Part shown: positions 54,747 to 64,000 of the stretch, one piece after another
Layout of the letters: every line of letters begins with the position of its first letter
How positions within the stretch are numbered: position 1 is the stretch's first letter
IMG/VR virus record: IMGVR_UViG_3300023184_000025
Span: 281,155 to 345,154 of that record
Direction: 5' to 3' (one strand)
DNA length: 64,000 bases
Made by a program: the position numbers and the translations under genes
The notes under the pieces: generated by a model
The model's database searches: none
Seen by the model: only the letters and a program-made list of their open reading frames with translations
What the model was told of the DNA's origin: nothing

Positions 54747-55340
54747 TTAAATATCACGTGTAGTTATCACTTTGTCAGCAAGACCGTAATTAACTGATTC
54801 CTCTGCTGACATAAACTTGTCACGATCCATATCTTCGGTCAGCTGTTCAAAAGTTTTACCTGTTGAATTATGCTTGACATAGATTTCAGTTAACCGTTTT
54901 TTCAAATAGGTGATTTCTTTGTAGCTAATCTCAATATCGCTTTGCATGCCACGAGCGCCACCGCTGGGTTGGTGTATCATGTGACGTGCATTAGGCAGGA
55001 TCATGCGCTTGCCTTTGGCACCTGACTGTGCCAACAAACTTCCCATGCTACATGCTTGTCCCATTACAATGGTGTTGATATCGGGTTTAATAAATTGCAT
55101 GGTATCATAGATAGCCATACCAGCAGTGACACTACCTCCAGGGCTATTGATGTACATACTAATGTCTTTGTCTGGATTCTCGCTCTCAAGAAACAATAAC
55201 TGAGCAACAATTAAATTTGCCATTTGATCGTGTACTTCACCTTCAAGTAAAATTACACGGTCACGCAACAAGCGGCTATAGATATCATAACTACGCTCAC
55301 CTTTGCTGGTTTGTTCCAGCACCATTGGTACTAACGCCAT
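54747..55340 (-). CDS. clpP: ATP-dependent Clp protease proteolytic subunit
   Basis: DIYSRLL, YINSPGG, ACSMG (Ser), MIHQP (His), DRD. Confidence 0.96.
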
Positions 55341-55349
55341 ATTTTACCT

Positions 55350-55610
55350 TTAAAGAGTTTTGCCAGCAGTTTCGAGAATAGTTTCCAAGAGCTCGTGGTC
55401 CTGACGTGTTTTCCCTAGTTCGGCTTTGTGTGCGATCCTGATTGCTTTTTTAAGAACAGCTGGTTTGATTTCAAGTTCTTCGGCAATGGCTTTAATGGTA
55501 TCATTTAGGCCGCCATTTAAAGTTTCAACTTCGTGCATGACCTGCATGCCTTCATTGATAATCTGAATAAGTTTAATCTTTTGATCGCCATTAAATGTTT
55601 TGTTGTCCAC
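55350..55610 (-). CDS. T4 DsbA/GapR-like dsDNA-binding protein
   Basis: LNDTIKAIAEELEIKPAVLKKAIRIAHK helical pattern; promoter TTGACC-17bp-TATACT at 55631-55659. Confidence 0.65.
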   Translation of the reverse strand: MDNKTFNGDQKIKLIQIINEGMQVMHEVETLNGGLNDTIKAIAEELEIKPAVLKKAIRIAHKAELGKTRQDHELLETILETAGKTL

Positions 55611-55683
55611 AAGAGTTCTCCTAAAGACTTAGTATAACAGGTTTATCTGCCTAGGTCAACAATATATGGCTATTTTGGTAGAA

Positions 55684-56754
55684 TTATAATCCGCCAAATA
55701 AAAATACTCGGTCAAGATTTTTTATTTGATCTAACGCTTCTTGTGCTTGTTGATATTGACTGTGCTCGGGATCAAATACGTCAATCAACTTAAATTCATT
55801 GTTGGAGAATGTGCCCCAATTTCCAATTCTTCCATACTCAATTAAATCTACGCCCAGGTGCTGGCCCATGTTGTAAAATTCTAGCATCTCTTCAAAATTA
55901 TCTTTTTGAACTATCATTCGAATTTTAAACAGCATGCCATTTTGTTTTTTCTTTTCAGAAATCCACAATAATGCATGTTGTAGGTCGTCCCAGCGTCCAC
56001 CACGACGCAATTTTTCATATGTAGCAGACCTTGCGGCATCGGTGGTAATGGTAATCGATTTTACTTTTTCTTGCATGCTGCCAAGTCGATGCCAACGGTC
56101 TGGTACCAGTAAACCATTTGATTGTATAGCCAATTGTACGTTTGGAAAATCCTCTGTTGATATTGTGTTAACAAACGACAACAACATTGGACTGGCAAAT
56201 AATTCTCCACTGGTACTCACATGTAGTACGATTGGTTGATTAGTAGGTGTACAAAACAAATTTGATTTTAGTGTTTGCCCTAGGTGTTCTAGATGTTCAT
56301 TCTGTGCATCATTGTTTTTTATAATTTCCGTTCGACAACTTGGGCAACTGAGATTACAGGTTCGATCGCCAGATACCCAAATTTCTTTGGGCATAATGTA
56401 ACGAGATGCATCAAGAAGCAAGGGTTTAATATCATTGCCTACATTTTCTTTATCATTAAGATGATTGTGCCTTAAGATTCCGCAGGTGTTCTCGTTGCAA
56501 TAATCGTAGGTACCATCAATAATGCTCTGTCGCACATTGGTACTGTCAGCATTGGACAATATTTCGTCAAGTGAATTAATTAATAAATTTCCAACACTAG
56601 ATGGCATCCAGTCTTGACAACCACAGAGAGTTACTCTACCATCAAGTCCAATGCACATGCCCACAAAAGGACTAAGACAAACAAGATTTTGTAAATTTTT
56701 TGCTGGGAATTGTACTAGTGGCTTCTGTATCCAATTTAGTTTGTATTTTGACAT
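55684..56754 (-). CDS. radical SAM protein with N-terminal SPASM-like cluster
   Basis: CLSPF..CGC..C..C, then CNLSCPSC, SGELF. Confidence 0.8.
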   Translation of the reverse strand: MSKYKLNWIQKPLVQFPAKNLQNLVCLSPFVGMCIGLDGRVTLCGCQDWMPSSVGNLLINSLDEILSNADSTNVRQSIIDGTYDYCNENTCGILRHNHLNDKENVGNDIKPLLLDASRYIMPKEIWVSGDRTCNLSCPSCRTEIIKNNDAQNEHLEHLGQTLKSNLFCTPTNQPIVLHVSTSGELFASPMLLSFVNTISTEDFPNVQLAIQSNGLLVPDRWHRLGSMQEKVKSITITTDAARSATYEKLRRGGRWDDLQHALLWISEKKKQNGMLFKIRMIVQKDNFEEMLEFYNMGQHLGVDLIEYGRIGNWGTFSNNEFKLIDVFDPEHSQYQQAQEALDQIKNLDRVFLFGGL

Positions 56755-57528: not shown

Positions 57529-59187
57529 TTACTTGCTGGATTTATAACTAGCGTAGCCTCGACCGTAGCCACTTTGTTGGCTTTCGTCTAGCCCTGGTAA
57601 TAGTCCGGCTTTTTTCATTGCGGCTTTGGTTGCTGGCCCAACATCCATGCCTGTGTCTACGATTTTTCCATCTTTTACTAAGAGAAAACGTGCTTGACTT
57701 CTAATAATAGCTGATCCGTTACTGCCACGATTTGGTGTAACACTTATATTACTTTCAGTGTCTAATACTGCTTTAACTGTGTGTCCAGCAACATCTATTG
57801 TGGTTAAAACAAAACCGTTGCCTAAATCTTGTTGTTGACTTGATTGTGCCATAGCACCGCCAGCGGCTCCAGCCAATGCGGCAGCGCCAAGTCCTCGCAA
57901 GAATCCTCTACGATTCATATCGGCTTCCGATACACCTTGAGGTTTATCGTTGGGGTTGGTGGTCAACACAAACTCTTTGCCCTTGTTGAACAGTTTGGCC
58001 TGCATTGTTAGTGCGGCGTTGTTCGCGGTAGCCTTGTCACGGAATGAGTAAGGGTTGCCTGCTTTGTCTCTAATGAGTTTTCCATTGAGCCGGATATACC
58101 AGGTACGAGTGTCAGGTGCTGGGGCCTGGCCTTCAGGATCTCTAGCACCACGCTTGAAGCCTGTGCGATTTGTATAATAGTCGTTGCGGGCTTCGTCTAA
58201 CTCTGCCTCCGCCACACCCTTCTTGGCAAAACGAGGATTGTGGAAAGCACCTTCGACGTACCATTCCATGTCATCATCATTTACTTTACAGTTCAATACT
58301 TGAACACTATAGCCTTGGTCATCTAACCAGGCCTGTGCTTGTTGTATCATTTCTTGTTTAGAAACGTCGCCACTGACGTCCAAATCGTTCCACCAACCAT
58401 CACCAACTAAGTCAGTCATTTGGTCATCCGTGTACCAACGTCCTGATTCGCCGCCGCCATTACCTGGAGCAAATTCTTTTAGGTTGCCTTGCTGGCCATA
58501 CATATCCATTAGTTGTCGAACATAGAAACTATAATGGCCACGACGGTCATTGTATTCTCTGTCTCCAAGCACAGTCTTTAATGCGGCCACAGCATCACTC
58601 ATTTCAGAACCATGCATTATTTTTAATGCGTCAGTAACCAGTGAATCAACTCGCTGTGAACTTTCTGCCATGTCTTGCTTTTTCTTTTTAGCAATAGCAA
58701 TTGCGGCTTGCTGTGCGGCATTGGCAGCTTCGTCCATGGCCTTCTTGAATCCTTTGCCAGGCTCCCATCCTGCGATAGGTTTGCACTTGCAACTATCACC
58801 AGGGCACTTGCAATTCTGCATGCCACATTGCATACAGCGTTCTTTGGACTCTTGTATGCTTTCATTTGGCACACAGTTTCTTACTGACTTGCCTGTTGTA
58901 GCACTTTTCTTTGTGCCTGCCGCATGATAGCCACTCCAGCAGTTGGTATAACCGTTGCTGTCTTTTTGGCCCTTCTTAATCTCATTGAGACTGCCATGTG
59001 TTTGACACATGCCACAGTCTTCACACACCATTTCCATCTCAACTGACTCGTTGTGTTTTTTCTTACCAGCACAATGAGCCTTTTGACTAAATCCTTTAGG
59101 GTGAGAGCAGTTGATACTGCTCTTGTATTTTTGACTCCACTGTTCCGCCACGCTCTGCGTGTTTTCAAATAAGGTATTGAGATTCAT
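57529..59187 (-). CDS. modular polyprotein-like protein, probable internal head/ejected protein
   Basis: Unrelated modules separated by SVAE, LNE, IQE, MDE, DMAE, LKE, GVAE, LDE, GVSE. Confidence 0.6.
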   Translation of the reverse strand: MNLNTLFENTQSVAEQWSQKYKSSINCSHPKGFSQKAHCAGKKKHNESVEMEMVCEDCGMCQTHGSLNEIKKGQKDSNGYTNCWSGYHAAGTKKSATTGKSVRNCVPNESIQESKERCMQCGMQNCKCPGDSCKCKPIAGWEPGKGFKKAMDEAANAAQQAAIAIAKKKKQDMAESSQRVDSLVTDALKIMHGSEMSDAVAALKTVLGDREYNDRRGHYSFYVRQLMDMYGQQGNLKEFAPGNGGGESGRWYTDDQMTDLVGDGWWNDLDVSGDVSKQEMIQQAQAWLDDQGYSVQVLNCKVNDDDMEWYVEGAFHNPRFAKKGVAEAELDEARNDYYTNRTGFKRGARDPEGQAPAPDTRTWYIRLNGKLIRDKAGNPYSFRDKATANNAALTMQAKLFNKGKEFVLTTNPNDKPQGVSEADMNRRGFLRGLGAAALAGAAGGAMAQSSQQQDLGNGFVLTTIDVAGHTVKAVLDTESNISVTPNRGSNGSAIIRSQARFLLVKDGKIVDTGMDVGPATKAAMKKAGLLPGLDESQQSGYGRGYASYKSSK

Positions 59188-59780
59188 TATGCTTCATCCA
59201 AGTAATCGGGTGTGGCCTGTATAACTTCTACTGTGTTTTCTCTACGATGAGCACAGTACATTTCACAGGCCATCTCGGCATGTTTGAGTGATTCAAACTT
59301 TGCACTATGTGGTTTGTTTTTAATTGTAATTCTGAAACCATCATCATCGTTGCCGTGGATTTTAATTTCATGTCCGTCGTCGGTGTTGATAGTTCTAACT
59401 GAAGGCCCAATATGATCAACATCCTGTGGTATTTTATCTTTGAGATCAGAGTCTGACTTAATTTCGTTTGAAAGGTCAGCCAGGTAGTCGCCTAGTTTTT
59501 TCTTAACTGTGCTGATTACATCTTCGGATGTGACCACTTCAGAGATAGTTTCTTGATCTTCGTCTTGTTCAACACTCTCTGCTCCAACAAAGTATCCCTT
59601 GGTAGGATGCTCAGGATCAGTTCTATTGGTTAATACATTGATACTTTTTGGTTTAAACAGCGCAGGAAGTTCAGGAACTCTCCTTTGTTGTTTATTAAGT
59701 CCAGATTTAACATCCACAGGGGTAATTTCTCCCTCGGCAATTTTATCCAGCTTTGCTAAAATATCTTTTAAATCGCTCAT
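59187..59780 (-). CDS. acidic hypothetical virion-type protein
   Basis: MSDLKDILAKLDKIAE N-terminus; start set at 59780. Confidence 0.6.
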   Translation of the reverse strand: MSDLKDILAKLDKIAEGEITPVDVKSGLNKQQRRVPELPALFKPKSINVLTNRTDPEHPTKGYFVGAESVEQDEDQETISEVVTSEDVISTVKKKLGDYLADLSNEIKSDSDLKDKIPQDVDHIGPSVRTINTDDGHEIKIHGNDDDGFRITIKNKPHSAKFESLKHAEMACEMYCAHRRENTVEVIQATPDYLDEA

Positions 59781-60217
59781 GCCCGCTCGCCTTTTAAGAA
59801 ACTTCTTAACATCCAACCATGCTTGGCCTGTGCGTCTAGGCGTTCAGCAATGAAGTTGGCAATGCCCTGGTTGTTTTCTTGTTCAGCACTGACAAATGTT
59901 TGATTCAATAAATCAATTAGGGCTCCGTTGTCAGAAAGCAACTCTTCAATCATCAATCGGGCACGTGGGATCTTGGTTTGTCCTTGTATGATAGACAGTT
60001 CTTGAAAACGTTCAAAACTGCCTGGACTGTATTCTTGTAAGGTGCGAATGTATTCAGCAATTCGATCAACTGCGCCGTACACCTCTTCATAGAAGTTGGC
60101 AAAGAAATCGTGGTATTGAGCAAAGTCAGGACCTTCCACATTCCAGTGAAAATTCTGTGCTTTGATACTCAAAGCATATTGTGTGGCCAGCAAAGTCTTT
60201 AAATCGTCCGATAACAT
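59777..60217 (-). CDS. dps: Dps ferritin-like DNA-protection protein
   Basis: NFHWNVEGPDF..YH..F..DRIAEYIRTL ferroxidase motifs. Confidence 0.92.
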   Translation of the reverse strand: MLSDDLKTLLATQYALSIKAQNFHWNVEGPDFAQYHDFFANFYEEVYGAVDRIAEYIRTLQEYSPGSFERFQELSIIQGQTKIPRARLMIEELLSDNGALIDLLNQTFVSAEQENNQGIANFIAERLDAQAKHGWMLRSFLKGERA

Positions 60218-60899: not shown

Positions 60900-62270
60900 T
60901 TAGTGGAACATTAAAAACTGATTTTGTACATCGAGTCTTGTTGCACCCAAGTCGCCGTGGCCTGCTGGAAATACTACCACATTCCATTTAGGCTTGGGTC
61001 CTTCGGGGATACGATTCATTTGGTCGTATGTGATAATTGATCCTGGGTCAATATTGTATTTTGTAGATAACTTCTGTTTGAAGTTTTCCCATGCTTCTGG
61101 GCTTTTGACCTGTGTGCGGCCTTGTTCATCCTTGACATATTTGCCCTTGGCATCAGTCACAAACAAATCGCGGAACATGTCTTTGGGAATAGTCGGTGCG
61201 CCTTTTAGGTTCTTACCGGCATTTCTGTAGAGTTCAACTTTCTTGACTTCTCGACTCTTGGCACCACCATCACTGAAGTTGGGTAATGTATTAGACGGCG
61301 TGTTTGGATCAGTTACTGGATCTCCCATTTTGCTGTAGAAGTAAAAACGTACATCTGGGTTGTTGAGTTGCACTTTCTTACTAAGGTCCCAGTACTCTTT
61401 AGAGAAAAAGTCGCCAGCATCATGAATGCGCACCAGCAACTTGATGCCATTTTTGTCTGCCAGTGCTTTTGTTCGTTTGATTTCTGCGTCAAACATTGCC
61501 ATGTACTCATCAGGGTGATTAACCAAGAAGTTCAATGCTTGTGCGGCCGACATAGATGCGGCAGGGAACATAACGTAGCCGCCTTTTCTAGCATAACAGA
61601 ACAGTTGACATTCGCCTGCACCCGGGCATGTGGTAATTTCCACAAACTCTCCGGTGTCTTCATCCACAACAATACCACTTAGTGCTGGTAGTGTCAAGTC
61701 GTATGTGATGGCACCTTCTTTTTTACTCTTGCTCATCTTGGCATTTGATCCAAGGATTGCCCTGGGCGGTGTAGTAATTTGACGCTTTAGATCTTCCAAG
61801 TCCCATTCTTCTGTACCATCGTCTTTGGTAATGGCTTTGACATTGCTACCGTGAATAATAGGCTTAAAGCGATCTTGTTTGGTTTTTGTACCTGTTTTAA
61901 TTCGAGTTAGGTAATCCTGCATGTCTTGCTTAGACCATGACTTCTGTGGAGCATTTAACTTGATTGCTTCCGCCACACCGTTATCTGTGCCAATGTAGTG
62001 ATGATTGTGTACTTTGTAGCCTTGTTTACGATACCAATTGACAGCAGTATTAACAGCAGATTCACGATCTAATGCACGTACCTTGGCCTTGCGTTGTTTT
62101 AGTTCTTGACGTTGTGTCACAGCTGGACTGTGAGGATCACTGACAGTGACAGCAACTATGTGCTTGTCAAAGTTATGCTCAAGTTCTTCACTGACACCGG
62201 TGTTCTCAATATGCAAAGGTTTTACTTTGAATCCGCCCAGGGTAGTTTCTTGAAGTTCGTTAAATCTCAT
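60900..62270 (-). CDS. modular protein with C-terminal GP88-like (atypical radical SAM) domain
   Basis: MRFNELQE, GVSE and GVAE modules; TCPGAGECQLFCYARKG, RIHDAGDF, FYFYSK. Confidence 0.65.
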   Translation of the reverse strand: MRFNELQETTLGGFKVKPLHIENTGVSEELEHNFDKHIVAVTVSDPHSPAVTQRQELKQRKAKVRALDRESAVNTAVNWYRKQGYKVHNHHYIGTDNGVAEAIKLNAPQKSWSKQDMQDYLTRIKTGTKTKQDRFKPIIHGSNVKAITKDDGTEEWDLEDLKRQITTPPRAILGSNAKMSKSKKEGAITYDLTLPALSGIVVDEDTGEFVEITTCPGAGECQLFCYARKGGYVMFPAASMSAAQALNFLVNHPDEYMAMFDAEIKRTKALADKNGIKLLVRIHDAGDFFSKEYWDLSKKVQLNNPDVRFYFYSKMGDPVTDPNTPSNTLPNFSDGGAKSREVKKVELYRNAGKNLKGAPTIPKDMFRDLFVTDAKGKYVKDEQGRTQVKSPEAWENFKQKLSTKYNIDPGSIITYDQMNRIPEGPKPKWNVVVFPAGHGDLGATRLDVQNQFLMFH

Positions 62271-62323: not shown

Positions 62324-62980
62324 TCAGATAAAGTTTGGATGATTGATAACTTGCTCTGCATATAGTTTATTGGTTTTTTCACCGGGGTGCATATTATCAT
62401 CTGCAAAATCTAACATTTGTGACATCCAGGAAGCATTGTCATCTGATAAAAATTGTGTTTTATCAAGCTGATTAAACAGCATTGGAAAACCTCGAGCTTG
62501 TTCCAAAAATCCCATGCCGTTTATTAATATCATTTTAGAATCATGTTGCTTGCAATAATTTTGCAACAAAATTAATTTCAACAGATCTTGTTCAATTTCT
62601 TTTCTGGTATTAAAAAAATTAATTCCAACTTCTATAATAGAGTTAGTTTCTAAATTGGTTTTTGTATTAGAGACCCGGCCACCGTTAAAAATACAAAAGT
62701 CAGTGGAGTTGTTCCTCCAAAACCAACGTCGTCGAGTTGATGTTGTTTGTATTATAACAACGTCATAATGTGTAGATAAAATTTCCTGTATTGCACGATA
62801 TAAGATTTCTTGGTTGCTAAGGCCGCCATAACTGATATTGGTAATAGAAACATTTGTTTTAGTGGATACTATGTTGTACCAACATCTAGGATCATCATGA
62901 TTTCCAACAATCTCTCCAAATCCGCAATAATCGCTAAACGAGCATCCTACTAACAAAATAGATTTTAAAGATGCTGACAT
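62324..62980 (-). CDS. SGNH-like protein
   Basis: LVGCSFSD, GLSNQEI, DNMHPG. Confidence 0.6.
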   Translation of the reverse strand: MSASLKSILLVGCSFSDYCGFGEIVGNHDDPRCWYNIVSTKTNVSITNISYGGLSNQEILYRAIQEILSTHYDVVIIQTTSTRRRWFWRNNSTDFCIFNGGRVSNTKTNLETNSIIEVGINFFNTRKEIEQDLLKLILLQNYCKQHDSKMILINGMGFLEQARGFPMLFNQLDKTQFLSDDNASWMSQMLDFADDNMHPGEKTNKLYAEQVINHPNFI

Positions 62981-63399
62981 TATTTTTTGCGACCAGCTTT
63001 CATGTTGGCACACCAGTGCGCCATGCGTTGTCTTTCGCCGGAACTGTTGGCAGCAATGCTACGCAACTTCGAAACTGATTGTTTGCAGTTGACACCCTTG
63101 CGTTTGGCCAGACCTTTGCGTCCGGGTTTTTTACCATCGGCAAAGTTTTCTTTCATAACCCAGGTGTCTGGAACTTCATGGTACCGGTCAACCCACATGT
63201 CATGTAACTTCTGACCACTGATGCTGTGAGTTTTTGCAATACGTGTCATAATTTTGTCAATACTATCGTACACTTGATCATCGCTGGCAGACTGCAATTT
63301 TTGTTTGCGAGCTATCAATGCTGCCTTGAGTTCCGCCACTGCTTGATGGTCTTTGCTGTGGTCCATGTTTTCTGATACAATAAATTCTTGTGCTCTCAT
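62980..63399 (-). CDS. modular virion-type protein (MRAQEFIVSE..., KENFADGKKPGRKG)
   Basis: Modules separated by E motifs. Confidence 0.55.
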   Translation of the reverse strand: MRAQEFIVSENMDHSKDHQAVAELKAALIARKQKLQSASDDQVYDSIDKIMTRIAKTHSISGQKLHDMWVDRYHEVPDTWVMKENFADGKKPGRKGLAKRKGVNCKQSVSKLRSIAANSSGERQRMAHWCANMKAGRKK

Positions 63400-64000
63400 G
63401 CTAGTCCAATCTTTCCTGGCGCCATTGGTCCAGTTGCAATTCTTTCACCACCATCAAAGTAACGTATTTCTACGGGCATGTCTGGCCAGTTTAATCTGTA
63501 GGCAGCCATGATGCGATGATTGCCTTCGTTGACCCAGGCTTCGCCATTGTAGGCCACCATGATATAGGGCAGGTATTCTTCGTTGGGGTTACTGCCCATG
63601 GGCGGCAATTTGCCAGTCTTGTCCATGTAGTCCATCAACCACTTTAGGTCATTTTTGCGCACATTCATTTGTTCGTTGCGCATACCAGGCAACGAAGCTA
63701 GTCGCATCACACGCACTCTAGGTGGAGTTCCAACCACACCAGCAGTGGTGCTACCCATGTAAGGAACACCGTAGCTGTTACGGCCTTTGCTCTTGGCATA
63801 GTCAATTTTATCTTGCAACCACTCTTCATTGGGTACGTCTACGCTTAGTTTGCCTTCCGCCACACCTTGCTTCTTCATATACTTCTTACGCAATTTTAAG
63901 TCTGCTGGCGTTGCTTTTCTGATTAAATTCAAATATTTGTTTACTGGAATTTCTTTTATCTCAATGGGTTTGATGCCTTCTACTCCAGGAATAGAATGAA
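63396..64000 (-). CDS. modular protein with C-terminal ParB-like domain (5' end outside the window)
   Basis: Frame open to the window edge; GVAE then PYIMV..NEGNHRIMAA ParB-type GxHR motif. Confidence 0.6.
   Translation of the reverse strand, partial: HSIPGVEGIKPIEIKEIPVNKYLNLIRKATPADLKLRKKYMKKQGVAEGKLSVDVPNEEWLQDKIDYAKSKGRNSYGVPYMGSTTAGVVGTPPRVRVMRLASLPGMRNEQMNVRKNDLKWLMDYMDKTGKLPPMGSNPNEEYLPYIMVAYNGEAWVNEGNHRIMAAYRLNWPDMPVEIRYFDGGERIATGPMAPGKIGLA

What the first reader, a model, noticed from the sequence alone, without database searches (positions are those of the whole stretch)
57529..57936. Hidden twin-arginine signal peptide exposed after the last GVSE site
Seen: directly after GVSE-AD comes MNRRGFLRGLGAAALAGAAGGAMA-Q (57918-57847), a textbook RRxFL Tat signal with an h-region and AxA cleavage site, located about 420 residues inside the ORF. 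Inference: proteolysis in the capsid could unmask the signal so that an injected folded fragment is exported to the periplasm by host Tat. Alternatively the module is a captured Tat-substrate gene translated from an internal ATG.
Basis: partly seen in the sequence, partly recalled or inferred. Interest (0 to 1): 0.68.

Follow-up and report, generated by a model that had tools for sequence, protein, structure and literature searches.

The report
Buried Tat signal in phage polyprotein
A 345-kb freshwater T4-type giant phage encodes a chain of small protein modules, and the last one starts with a textbook bacterial Tat export signal sitting just behind a motif typical of capsid-protease cut sites. 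This suggests, but does not prove, that the phage cuts the chain and sends that piece to the host periplasm.

Summary
Residues 424-447 of the 552-aa ORF (window 57847-57918, minus strand) form a twin-arginine signal that passes NCBIfam TIGR01409 (23.1 bits, cut-off 16.7). They lie directly behind G-V-S-E.

The signal is conserved. In 19 aligned relatives at 37-85% identity, RR, F, G, G and A are invariant. It is a mobile mini-cassette found inside long mosaic ORFs of ~350-kb freshwater phages that carry T4-type head genes.

- In 41 of 45 distinct contexts, a [LIVM]xE motif ends 2-5 residues before RR (background 9%).
- Only 17 of 45 contexts have a Met there. Relatives use CTC, TTA, ATC or GTT codons instead, so an internal start is not the general mechanism.
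- Every Pfam-named domain directly after such a signal acts on the cell envelope: TonB/TolA C-terminal, LysM+SLT, GH19, M48. Domains upstream are cytoplasmic types.
- Some ORFs carry two signals.
- The genome has an S77 (gp21-type) prohead protease. Neighbouring genes start MRAQEFI.E, which resembles the T4 capsid-targeting sequence MKTYQEFIAE.

Best reading: a cargo polyprotein is cut at [LIVM]xE, which exposes a Tat signal. Cleavage, packaging, injection and export are all inferred. The function of the exported 85-aa domain is unknown.

The parts
57529..59187 (-). 552-aa mosaic ORF (P0001), a chain of about 8 small modules. Its start overlaps the stop of the upstream ORF (59187-59816).
   Evidence: There is no Pfam family for the whole protein. 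Homology breakpoints against other carriers cluster at the [LIVM]xE sites E113, E175, 234-238, E327, E421 and E535.
59143..59187 (-). N-terminal leader MNLNTLFENTQSVAE (aa 1-15), containing L-F-E and V-A-E.
   Evidence: The same leader type starts other carrier ORFs (MNLNNLFEA, MLLNHLFEN, MILNEFFN). Its role as a capsid-targeting leader is inferred, not shown.
58849..59142 (-). aa 16-113: basic WSxKYK..PKGFSQKAHCAGKKK mini-module plus a Cys-rich CW.GYH..VPNCV module, ending S-I-Q-E113.
   Evidence: It is shared with T4-like cyanophage proteins. In P-TIM68 the homologue lies directly after the scaffold and major head genes. Contig depth spikes here in lake metagenomes, which marks it as a module shared by many co-occurring phages.
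58207..58218 (-). G324-V-A-E327 linker.
   Evidence: HSP ends cluster at 328 and HSP starts at 320.
57925..58206 (-). aa 328-421: module WYIRLNGK..FVLTTNPND, ending in the Q-G-V-S-E421 linker.
   Evidence: The same module precedes the cassette in P0002 and P0008. Other modules precede it in P0004, P0006 and P0007.
57925..57936 (-). G418-V-S-E421: a [LIVM]xE motif and the proposed cut site (after E421).
   Evidence: In 41 of 45 distinct contexts, a [LIVM]xE ends 2-5 residues before RR, against 9.2% background in the same proteins. It fits the Glu-C-terminal cleavage of T4-type proteases (PMC5694885). An LxE lies at the major-capsid-protein propeptide junction in this clade.
57847..57918 (-). 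Tat signal, aa 424-447: n-region MN, R426-R427, G-F-L, an Ala/Gly h-region and A-M-A447. The predicted signal-peptidase cut is before Q448.
   Evidence: TIGR01409 gives 23.1 bits against a cut-off of 16.7. RR, F, G, G and A are invariant in 19 relatives.
57583..57846 (-). aa 448-535: 'LGNGF' domain of about 85 aa (six beta strands and one helix), ending G-L-D-E535.
   Evidence: 48 cluster representatives were found in the exhaustive search. The model has pLDDT 80.5. No convincing fold match was found. In relatives a GVAEG, GIAEG or GIEEN linker follows it.
57532..57582 (-). aa 536-552: short Gly/Tyr/Ser-rich tail. The stop codon is at 57529-57531.
   Evidence: The model has low confidence here.
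62980..63399 (-). Neighbouring 139-aa ORF starting MRAQEFIVSE, a leader that resembles the T4 capsid-targeting sequence.
   Evidence: The T4 CTS is MKTYQEFIAE (PMC8442874).
63396..64000 (-). 3' part of an ORF that crosses the ends of the record. It continues in frame from genome position 706 down to 1, where it starts MRAQEFITEG and carries a GNAT domain. It has QGVAEG linkers.
   Evidence: plus my own frame arithmetic on the coordinates.
60900..62270 (-). 456-aa ORF starting MRFNELQETT, with G-V-S-E (25-28), G-V-A-E (98-101) and a GP88 domain.

Best explanation
The ORF is a modular cargo polyprotein of a ~345-kb freshwater phage with T4-type head genes. Its last module is a mobile cassette made of a genuine twin-arginine (Tat) signal and an 85-aa beta-rich domain. 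The modules are joined by [LIVM]xE linkers, typically Q-G-V-A-E-G. Most likely the chain is cut after the Glu of these linkers. The best candidate enzyme is the phage's S77 (gp21-type) prohead protease acting inside the prohead, as happens with T4 internal proteins. The cut after E421 would leave A-D-M-N-R-R-G-F-L at a free N-terminus. The fragment would then be taken by the host Tat system to the periplasm and trimmed at A-M-A|Q. If the cut is made in the capsid, the fragment reaches the cytoplasm of the next host by ejection with the DNA. Shown here: the signal, its conservation, the adjacent motif, the modular build, the envelope-type cargo in relatives, and the presence of the protease gene. 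Inferred: the cleavage itself, which enzyme does it, packaging, ejection, export, and what the domain does.
For: (1) The signal passes TIGR01409. RR, F, G, G and A are invariant over 19 sequences at 37-85% identity. (2) A [LIVM]xE ends 2-5 residues before RR in 41 of 45 distinct contexts, against 9.2% background. The flanks vary (GVAE-ADMS, SLEE-ID, NLNE-ID, ELEE-DLS, FIAE-DLS, PVDE-DIS). (3) There is no conserved start codon. Only 17 of 45 contexts have a Met, and the codons at that position include CTC, TTA, ATT, ATC, ATA and GTT. (4) Every Pfam-named domain directly after such a signal acts on the envelope: TonB_2/TolA_C (P0046, L033), LysM+SLT (L026, L028), GH19 (L066) and M48 (L030). In L028, a cytidine deaminase and ParB_N lie upstream of the signal and LysM+SLT lie downstream. 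(5) P0043 and the L008 ORF carry two signals. A module that sits upstream of the signal in P0001 lies between the two signals in P0043. This is coherent only if the modules are separated. (6) An S77 protease gene lies near the scaffold and major capsid genes in this genome. It is also present in the two most complete carrier records. An LxE lies at the capsid propeptide junction. (7) Five ORFs in this genome start MRA.[ED]FI. Some relatives start MRASEFIAE or MRAREFVNE directly followed by the Tat signal. The T4 CTS is MKTYQEFIAE, and gp21 removes it from ejected proteins (PMC8442874; PMC7411985). (8) Homology breakpoints fall at the [LIVM]xE sites.
Against: There is no protein-level evidence of any kind. 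P0001's own leader (MNLNTLFEN) is not the MRAQEFI.E type. The gene lies among replication and metabolism genes (DNA polymerase, ClpP, radical SAM, Dps), 140 kb from the head genes. From my own knowledge, T4 gp21 prefers Leu or Ile at P3, so Val is an extrapolation. The 45 contexts share ancestry, so the enrichment p-value overstates independence. The LGNGF domain occurs without any Tat signal in most relatives, so it is not an obligate periplasmic domain. Pfam's own TAT_signal model scores below its threshold for P0001. The linker is conserved at the nucleotide level. It could therefore be primarily a recombination joint rather than a cleavage site.
Confidence: 0.5

Rival explanations
1. The Tat signal works from its internal position without prior cleavage. 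The protein is made in the infected cell. The signal inserts as a loop, the upstream modules stay in the cytoplasm, and signal peptidase releases the C-terminal domain into the periplasm. Alternatively the h-region stays as a membrane anchor, as in TonB or TolA.
For: The signal is real and the cargo in relatives is envelope-type. TonB/TolA-like cargo would naturally be membrane-anchored. From my own knowledge, Tat signals tolerate N-terminal extensions (thylakoid loop mechanism; the internal Tat signal of actinobacterial Rieske proteins). The gene is not in the head module.
Against: It does not explain why a [LIVM]xE sits at a fixed 2-5 residue distance in 41 of 45 contexts. It does not explain two signals in one chain (P0043, L008). 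It does not explain why the same module lies upstream of the signal in P0001 but downstream of one in P0043. It does not explain the [LIVM]xE linker after the exported domain.
Confidence: 0.2
2. An internal translation start at ATG 57918 makes a separate 129-aa Tat precursor, that is, a captured gene nested within the ORF.
For: An ATG is present. The upstream 25 nt can pair with the anti-SD at -6.4 kcal/mol, which is in the top 5% of internal ATGs in this genome. Seventeen of 45 contexts keep a Met.
Against: The SD-like AAGGTG comes from the Q-G-V codons that every linker has, and it lies 14 nt upstream. Of the 45 contexts, 28 have Leu, Ile or Val with codons such as CTC (L005, 82% identical cassette) and TTA. 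No stop codon ever separates the cassette from the upstream modules.
Confidence: 0.1
3. The segment is not an export signal. It is an Ala/Gly-rich flexible or membrane-active spacer whose RR motif serves another role, for example contact with DNA or the scaffold inside the capsid, or insertion into the inner membrane during ejection.
For: P0001 is below the Pfam TAT_signal threshold. The LGNGF domain often lacks the segment. No function is known for the cargo.
Against: The full Tat pattern is conserved: RR, F, [LI], G.G, an uncharged h-region, AxA, and often a Lys in the c-region. TIGR01409 is passed in P0001, P0043, P0046, P0047, P0049 and P0050. It is exclusively associated with envelope-acting named domains.
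Confidence: 0.1
4. Assembly or sequencing artefact that fuses two genes.
For: The major capsid gene of the same record has an in-frame TAA, so the record is not error-free.
Against: An identical ORF lies on a second contig. Independent lake contigs cover the junction with no indels. The fusion is conserved in dozens of relatives.
Confidence: 0.02

Closest known systems
T4 internal (ejection) proteins IPI, IPII, IPIII and Alt, with the capsid targeting sequence MKTYQEFIAE
   Same: The phage has T4-type head genes and an S77 protease. Neighbouring genes and some relatives start MRA.EFI.E. The proposed cut is C-terminal to Glu in a [LIV]xE motif. The loci are non-essential-looking and hyperplastic, with a conserved leader.
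   Different: T4 IPs are single small proteins cut once. Here long chains of up to 1,649 aa would be cut many times. No T4 IP carries an export signal. P0001's own leader differs from the CTS.
Polyvalent proteins of phages and conjugative elements (Iyer et al. 2017, PMC5512222)
   Same: Many unrelated effector-type domains lie in one polypeptide. The relative L028 combines a deaminase, ParB_N, LysM and SLT. That paper postulates delivery with the invading DNA and processing into units with different subcellular targets.
   Different: That class is processed by an embedded MPTase-type peptidase, and no such domain was found here. The paper never mentions signal peptides or the periplasm. Here sorting would be done by Tat signals, and cutting by linkers that match the prohead protease.
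Ejection and inner-body proteins of phiKZ-like and SPN3US giant phages, processed by the prohead protease at A/S/G-x-E
   Same: Giant phages in which many head-internal proteins are cut after Glu at a short motif by a gp21-related protease (PMC5694885).
   Different: The lineage and motif differ. Those proteins lose long propeptides rather than being chains of shuffled modules. No export signals have been described in them.
Bacterial Tat signal peptides (TIGR01409 / PF10518)
   Same: Twin arginine, F-L, a weakly hydrophobic Ala/Gly h-region, and an AxA site. The TIGR01409 score is above its cut-off.
   Different: The signal is encoded 423 residues inside the ORF, not at the N-terminus. The n-region after the proposed cut would be only 2-5 residues.
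Exported or virion-borne phage muralytic enzymes (signal-peptide and SAR endolysins; the SLT domain of T7 gp16)
   Same: Relatives place LysM+SLT or GH19 directly behind the signal, so these are phage peptidoglycan hydrolases that must reach the periplasm.
   Different: From my own knowledge, the known cases use Sec-type signals or SAR anchors, or are ejected straight into the envelope. A Tat signal behind a CTS-like leader, or inside a polyprotein, has not been described in the papers I could search.

Membership tests
Tat (twin-arginine) signal peptide | Consensus [ST]-R-R-x-F-L-K-type motif | tested here: met
   N-R-R-G-F-L-R at aa 425-431. RR, F, G, G and A are invariant in alignment A1.
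Tat (twin-arginine) signal peptide | Score above the curated cut-off of a signal HMM | tested here: inconclusive
   TIGR01409 gives 23.1 bits against 16.7, which passes. Pfam PF10518 gives 14.8 against 22.7, which fails for P0001. Relatives reach 22.7-30.5.
Tat (twin-arginine) signal peptide | Uncharged, weakly hydrophobic h-region followed by an AxA signal-peptidase site | tested here: met
   G-L-G-A-A-A-L-A-G-A-A-G-G-A-M-A then Q. AxA-type ends are seen in relatives (A-Q-A, A-L-A, A-K-A).
Tat (twin-arginine) signal peptide | Located at the N-terminus of the translated protein | tested here: not met
   It starts at residue 424 of 552. In relatives it lies at positions 31-1211. It is N-proximal only in P0049, P0050, L026, L036, L055 and L066.
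Tat (twin-arginine) signal peptide | Tat-dependent export | not testable with these tools
   Needs a tat+/tatC- reporter assay.
T4-type CTS-bearing internal head (ejection) protein | N-terminal capsid targeting sequence resembling MKTYQEFIAE | tested here: inconclusive
   P0001 starts MNLNTLFENTQSVAE. Five other ORFs of the genome start MRA.[ED]FI..E. L026 starts MRASEFIAE.
T4-type CTS-bearing internal head (ejection) protein | Genome encodes a gp21-type (Peptidase_S77) prohead protease | tested here: met
   PF03420 scores 85.4 bits at genome 195719-196147, near the scaffold and Gp23 genes.
T4-type CTS-bearing internal head (ejection) protein | Cleaved by the prohead protease and present in virions | not testable with these tools
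   Needs virion proteomics. No cultured relative carrying this cassette is in the phage collection.
Polyvalent protein (Iyer et al. 2017) | Several unrelated effector domains in one polypeptide of a phage or plasmid | tested here: met
   About 8 modules with independent distributions. The relative L028 has a deaminase, ParB_N, LysM and SLT.
Polyvalent protein (Iyer et al. 2017) | Embedded processing peptidase (MPTase or similar) | tested here: not met
   No peptidase domain was found in P0001 or in eight long carriers scanned with Pfam. The M48 domain in L030 follows a Tat signal and looks like cargo.

The most novel reading that the evidence does not exclude
A clade of ~350-kb freshwater phages with T4-type heads packs chains of effector modules into the capsid. 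The prohead protease cuts them at [LIVM]xE linkers. Some of the freed pieces then carry N-terminal Tat signals. After ejection into the next host's cytoplasm, the host's own Tat system re-exports them to the periplasm. This would give the phage pre-made agents in the envelope (TonB/TolA-like decoys, muralytic enzymes, a protease, and the unknown LGNGF domain) before any phage gene is expressed.
Probability: 0.35. Interest if true: 0.85.

Novelty: new variant of a known kind. Interest (0 to 1): 0.72.

Why it matters
Ejected phage proteins are known to act in the cytoplasm (T4 IPI*, Alt) or to build envelope-spanning channels (T7, P22). A route in which injected cargo is sorted a second time by a host export system would be new. 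It would mean a cryptic signal becomes active only after a capsid protease cuts next to it. It would also give polyvalent cargo proteins a simple way to send domains to different compartments.

The family also shows an unusual evolutionary device. An 18-nt linker is conserved to the nucleotide across more than 120 viral contigs. It appears to serve both as a joint for shuffling modules and, possibly, as a protease site.

The hypothesis is directly testable with virion proteomics and a Tat reporter assay. The exported modules are candidates for superinfection exclusion or envelope remodelling.

Tried and rejected
- **Function of the LGNGF domain.** Pfam, NCBIfam and PHROGs gave nothing for it. 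The AlphaFold model (pLDDT 80.5) had no convincing match. Foldseek against the PDB gave best E 0.9. ESM Atlas gave TM at most 0.44. VIA-align wide gave best Z 4.3. The atlas feature search gave nothing. No function is assigned.
- **Cultured relatives with virion proteomes.** Megablast found none. tblastn matched only the N-terminal basic module, in T4-like cyanophages.
- **Timing of expression.** TATAAATA is depleted in the genome (12 found against about 44 expected), and 9 of the 12 lie within 60 nt upstream of ORF starts. None lies upstream of this operon, so this says nothing about its timing.
- **Internal start.** The SD-like signal upstream of ATG 57918 comes from the linker codons and lies too far away. 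The idea was rejected as a family-wide mechanism on codon evidence.
- **S77 protease in fragmentary carrier records.** It was absent from records that are 10-58% complete, which is uninformative.
- **ClpP (window 54747-55340) as the maturation protease.** Rejected. It is a full-length ClpP next to the DNA polymerase, while the S77 gene sits with the scaffold and capsid genes.
- **Literature.** I found no paper on Tat signals in ejected or giant-phage cargo, and none on the GVAEG linker.
- **Not run.** No complex prediction was run, because a protease-substrate contact is not a stable interface. No other genetic code was used.
Full report
**What is there.** Window 57529-59187 (minus strand) is one open 552-aa frame, P0001. 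The fragment passes NCBIfam TIGR01409 (23.1 bits, cut-off 16.7). It falls short of Pfam's shorter TAT_signal model (14.8 against 22.7). It is the only such motif among the 419 ORFs I called in the genome. The other 'site' is GVAE at 324-327, and the ORF has twelve [LIVM]xE motifs in all.

**Where it comes from.**
- The window is the last 64 kb of a 345,154-bp IMG/VR virus record, rated 99% complete, at 40% GC.
- The record encodes a T4-type major capsid protein (Gp23 family), a scaffold protein and a Peptidase_S77 (gp21-type) prohead protease.
- Its family-B DNA polymerase is closest to those of giant phages of Sinorhizobium, Agrobacterium and Xanthomonas, and to Rak2-like phages, at 42-51% identity.
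- The stretch is held by freshwater and lake metagenomes from several studies.
- Contigs from an independent study cover the junction without a single difference or indel.
- An identical ORF lies on a second viral contig.

The fusion is therefore real.

**The cassette is conserved and mobile.** An exhaustive HMMER search with residues 421-552 found 48 cluster representatives. In many of them the same signal-plus-domain cassette lies deep inside long ORFs, at positions 31 to 709, behind quite different upstream modules. In an alignment of 19 such segments at 37-85% identity, the columns for RR, F, G, G and A of R-R-x-F-x-x-G-x-G-A are invariant. The signal also occurs in front of other domains. 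The 85-aa 'LGNGF' domain often occurs without it. So the signal is a separate mini-module.

**The motif in front of it.** I collected 45 distinct contexts from the protein hits and from 35 viral loci.
- In 41 of them a [LIVM]xE ends 2-5 residues before the first Arg. The background rate is 9.2% for the same window in the same proteins. The nominal binomial p is 4e-38, which is overstated because the contexts share ancestry.
- The flanking residues differ widely (G-V-A-E|A-D-M-S, S-L-E-E|I-D, N-L-N-E|I-D, E-L-E-E|D-L-S, P-V-D-E|D-I-S, F-I-A-E|D-L-S). The pattern itself is what is kept.
- Often a general Q-G-V-A-E-G linker is followed by a second L-x-E right at the signal.
- One of the four exceptions, P0049, looks like an ordinary N-terminal signal.

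**Not an internal start.** Only 17 of the 45 contexts have a Met two residues before RR. In the loci, that codon is CTC (L005, whose cassette is 82% identical), TTA, ATT, ATC, ATA or GTT. In P0001 itself an ATG is present. The 25 nt upstream can pair with the anti-SD at -6.4 kcal/mol, which is in the top 5% of internal ATGs. However, that pairing comes from AAGGTG, the Q-G-V codons present in every linker, and it lies 14 nt away. An internal start cannot be excluded for this one ORF, but it is not how the family works.

**What follows the signal in relatives.** Every Pfam-named domain directly behind such a signal acts on the cell envelope:
- TonB_2/TolA C-terminal domain (P0046, E 9e-18; L033, E 3e-18);
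- LysM plus an SLT lytic transglycosylase (L026 and L028);
- glycoside hydrolase 19 (L066);
- peptidase M48 (L030).

In the 1,068-aa L028 ORF, a cytidine deaminase domain and a ParB_N domain lie upstream of the signal, and LysM+SLT lie downstream. Named domains not preceded by a signal are cytoplasmic types: GNAT, deaminase, ParB_N and GP88. This split is the strongest argument that the signals are real export signals.

**Why cleavage is the best reading.**
- P0043 and the L008 ORF each carry two signals in one chain.
- A module that lies upstream of the signal in P0001 (S-Q-R-V-D-S-L-V-T-D-A-L-K..) lies between the two signals in P0043.
- The exported domain is itself followed by another [LIVM]xE linker. 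This is G-L-D-E here and G-V-A-E-G, G-I-A-E-G or G-I-E-E-N in relatives.
- Homology breakpoints of P0001 against all other carriers pile up at E113, E175, 234-238, E327, E421 and E535.

These facts are coherent if each module is released separately. They are awkward if the chain stays whole.

**Why the prohead protease is the candidate.**
- T4 gp21 and its giant-phage relatives cut C-terminal to Glu in short motifs (PMC5694885).
- T4 internal proteins and Alt carry a short N-terminal capsid targeting sequence, MKTYQEFIAE. gp21 removes it, and the proteins are then ejected into the host (PMC8442874; PMC7411985; PMC9958956).
- In this genome five ORFs start M-R-A-x-[ED]-F-I, three of them at the record ends next to P0001.
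- Some relatives start M-R-A-S-E-F-I-A-E or M-R-A-R-E-F-V-N-E immediately followed by D-L-[ST]-R-R-G-F-L.
- The capsid protein of this clade has L-K-E or L-A-E where T4 gp23 is cut (the T4 position is from my own knowledge).
- S77 is present in the two most complete carrier records. The other carriers are fragments of genomes whose estimated size is about 350 kb.
- In the cyanophage P-TIM68, the homologue of P0001's first module lies directly after the scaffold and major head genes.

**What remains inferred.** Nothing here shows that the protein is cut, packed, ejected or exported.
- P0001's own leader (M-N-L-N-T-L-F-E-N) is of a second type.
- The gene sits among replication and metabolism genes.
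- Val at P3 is an extrapolation from the Leu/Ile preference of T4.
- The LGNGF domain has no recognisable fold or function, and it often lacks a signal.

I put 0.5 on 'real Tat signal unmasked by proteolysis at the adjacent motif' and about 0.35 on the full capsid-ejection-re-export route. The main rival, at 0.2, is an internal signal that works without prior cutting. One sub-variant I cannot exclude is that fragments leave the prohead and are exported in the producing cell. That seems unlikely for pieces of 13 kDa or more.

**The linker.** Q-G-V-A-E-G is conserved at the nucleotide level.
- Among 58 distinct sites in loci of 41% GC, Val is GTG in 50, Ala is GCG in 52 and Gly is GGT in 54.
- The exact 18-mer CAAGGTGTGGCGGAAGGC occurs in at least 120 IMG/VR stretches.
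- In 178 of 179 occurrences it is in frame as QGVAEG inside an ORF.
- In lake metagenomes, contig depth jumps up to ninefold over the small shared modules, and assemblies break there.

The linker therefore probably also serves as a recombination joint for shuffling modules. To my knowledge, the conserved CTS-coding leader of T-even IP genes has been proposed to work in the same way.

**Comparison and novelty.** The closest known systems are T4 internal proteins, the prohead-processed ejection proteins of phiKZ-like phages, and the 'polyvalent proteins' of Iyer et al. That paper never mentions signal peptides or the periplasm. It invokes an embedded peptidase, which is absent here. Literature searches found nothing on Tat signals in ejected or giant-phage cargo, or on the linker. 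I rate this a new variant of a known kind. If the re-export route is confirmed, it would be a new mechanism.

Noticed in passing
Loci L004-L159; in the window the variants lie at 57925-57942 and 58207-58221: The Q-G-V-A-E-G linker is conserved to the nucleotide (CAAGGTGTGGCGGAAGGC) despite 41% GC genomes. It occurs in at least 120 IMG/VR stretches and is in frame in 178 of 179 cases. It is probably a recombination joint for module shuffling as well as a candidate protease site.
   Followed up: partly
Genome 1-706, 707-1375, 154382-154771, 154768-155154; window 62980-63399: Five ORFs start M-R-A-x-[ED]-F-I, resembling the T4 capsid targeting sequence MKTYQEFIAE. One of them carries a GNAT acetyltransferase domain.
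   Followed up: partly
Window 63396-64000, joined to genome 1-706: A minus-strand ORF starting at genome position 706 runs off position 1 and continues in frame at the last base of the record. The 'linear' record therefore behaves as a closed or circularly permuted genome.
   Followed up: partly
L003 1714-1746 (genome about 193,530-193,562): The major capsid protein gene has a single in-frame TAA (..TTT TAA GCA..) that splits it into 301-aa and 93-aa ORFs. The genes in the related records G001 and G002 are intact. It is probably a sequencing error or a variant.
   Followed up: partly
Window 59000-59130, 58680-58743, 58232-58359: In lake metagenomes, contig depth rises up to ninefold over the small basic and Cys-rich modules, and contigs break there with unlike continuations. 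These mini-modules are shared at 90% or higher DNA identity by many co-occurring phages.
   Followed up: no
Window 54747-56754: A full-length ClpP (197 aa, E 5e-81) lies next to the DNA polymerase. A SPASM/radical-SAM protein (356 aa) is followed by small ORFs, and a Dps-like ferritin lies at 59777-60217. These are unusual auxiliary genes for a phage.
   Followed up: no
Whole genome: TATAAATA, the T4 late-promoter core, is depleted (12 found against about 44 expected), yet 9 of the 12 copies lie within 60 nt upstream of ORF starts. This suggests T4-like late promoters on a few genes.
   Followed up: partly
L039 2494-3615 (Prochlorococcus phage P-TIM68): The cyanophage homologue of the WSxKYK..PKGFSQKAHC mini-module sits right after the scaffold and major head genes. 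It starts M-M-K-S-F-I-D-F-S-E and ends in a long Gly/Asn repeat.
   Followed up: no
P0024, P0038: Some LGNGF-domain proteins carry a different hydrophobic segment upstream (W-K-S-x-L-A-x-A-x-L-x-x-A..H-A-G-G-V-S) instead of the Tat signal. It may be an alternative targeting or anchoring module.
   Followed up: no
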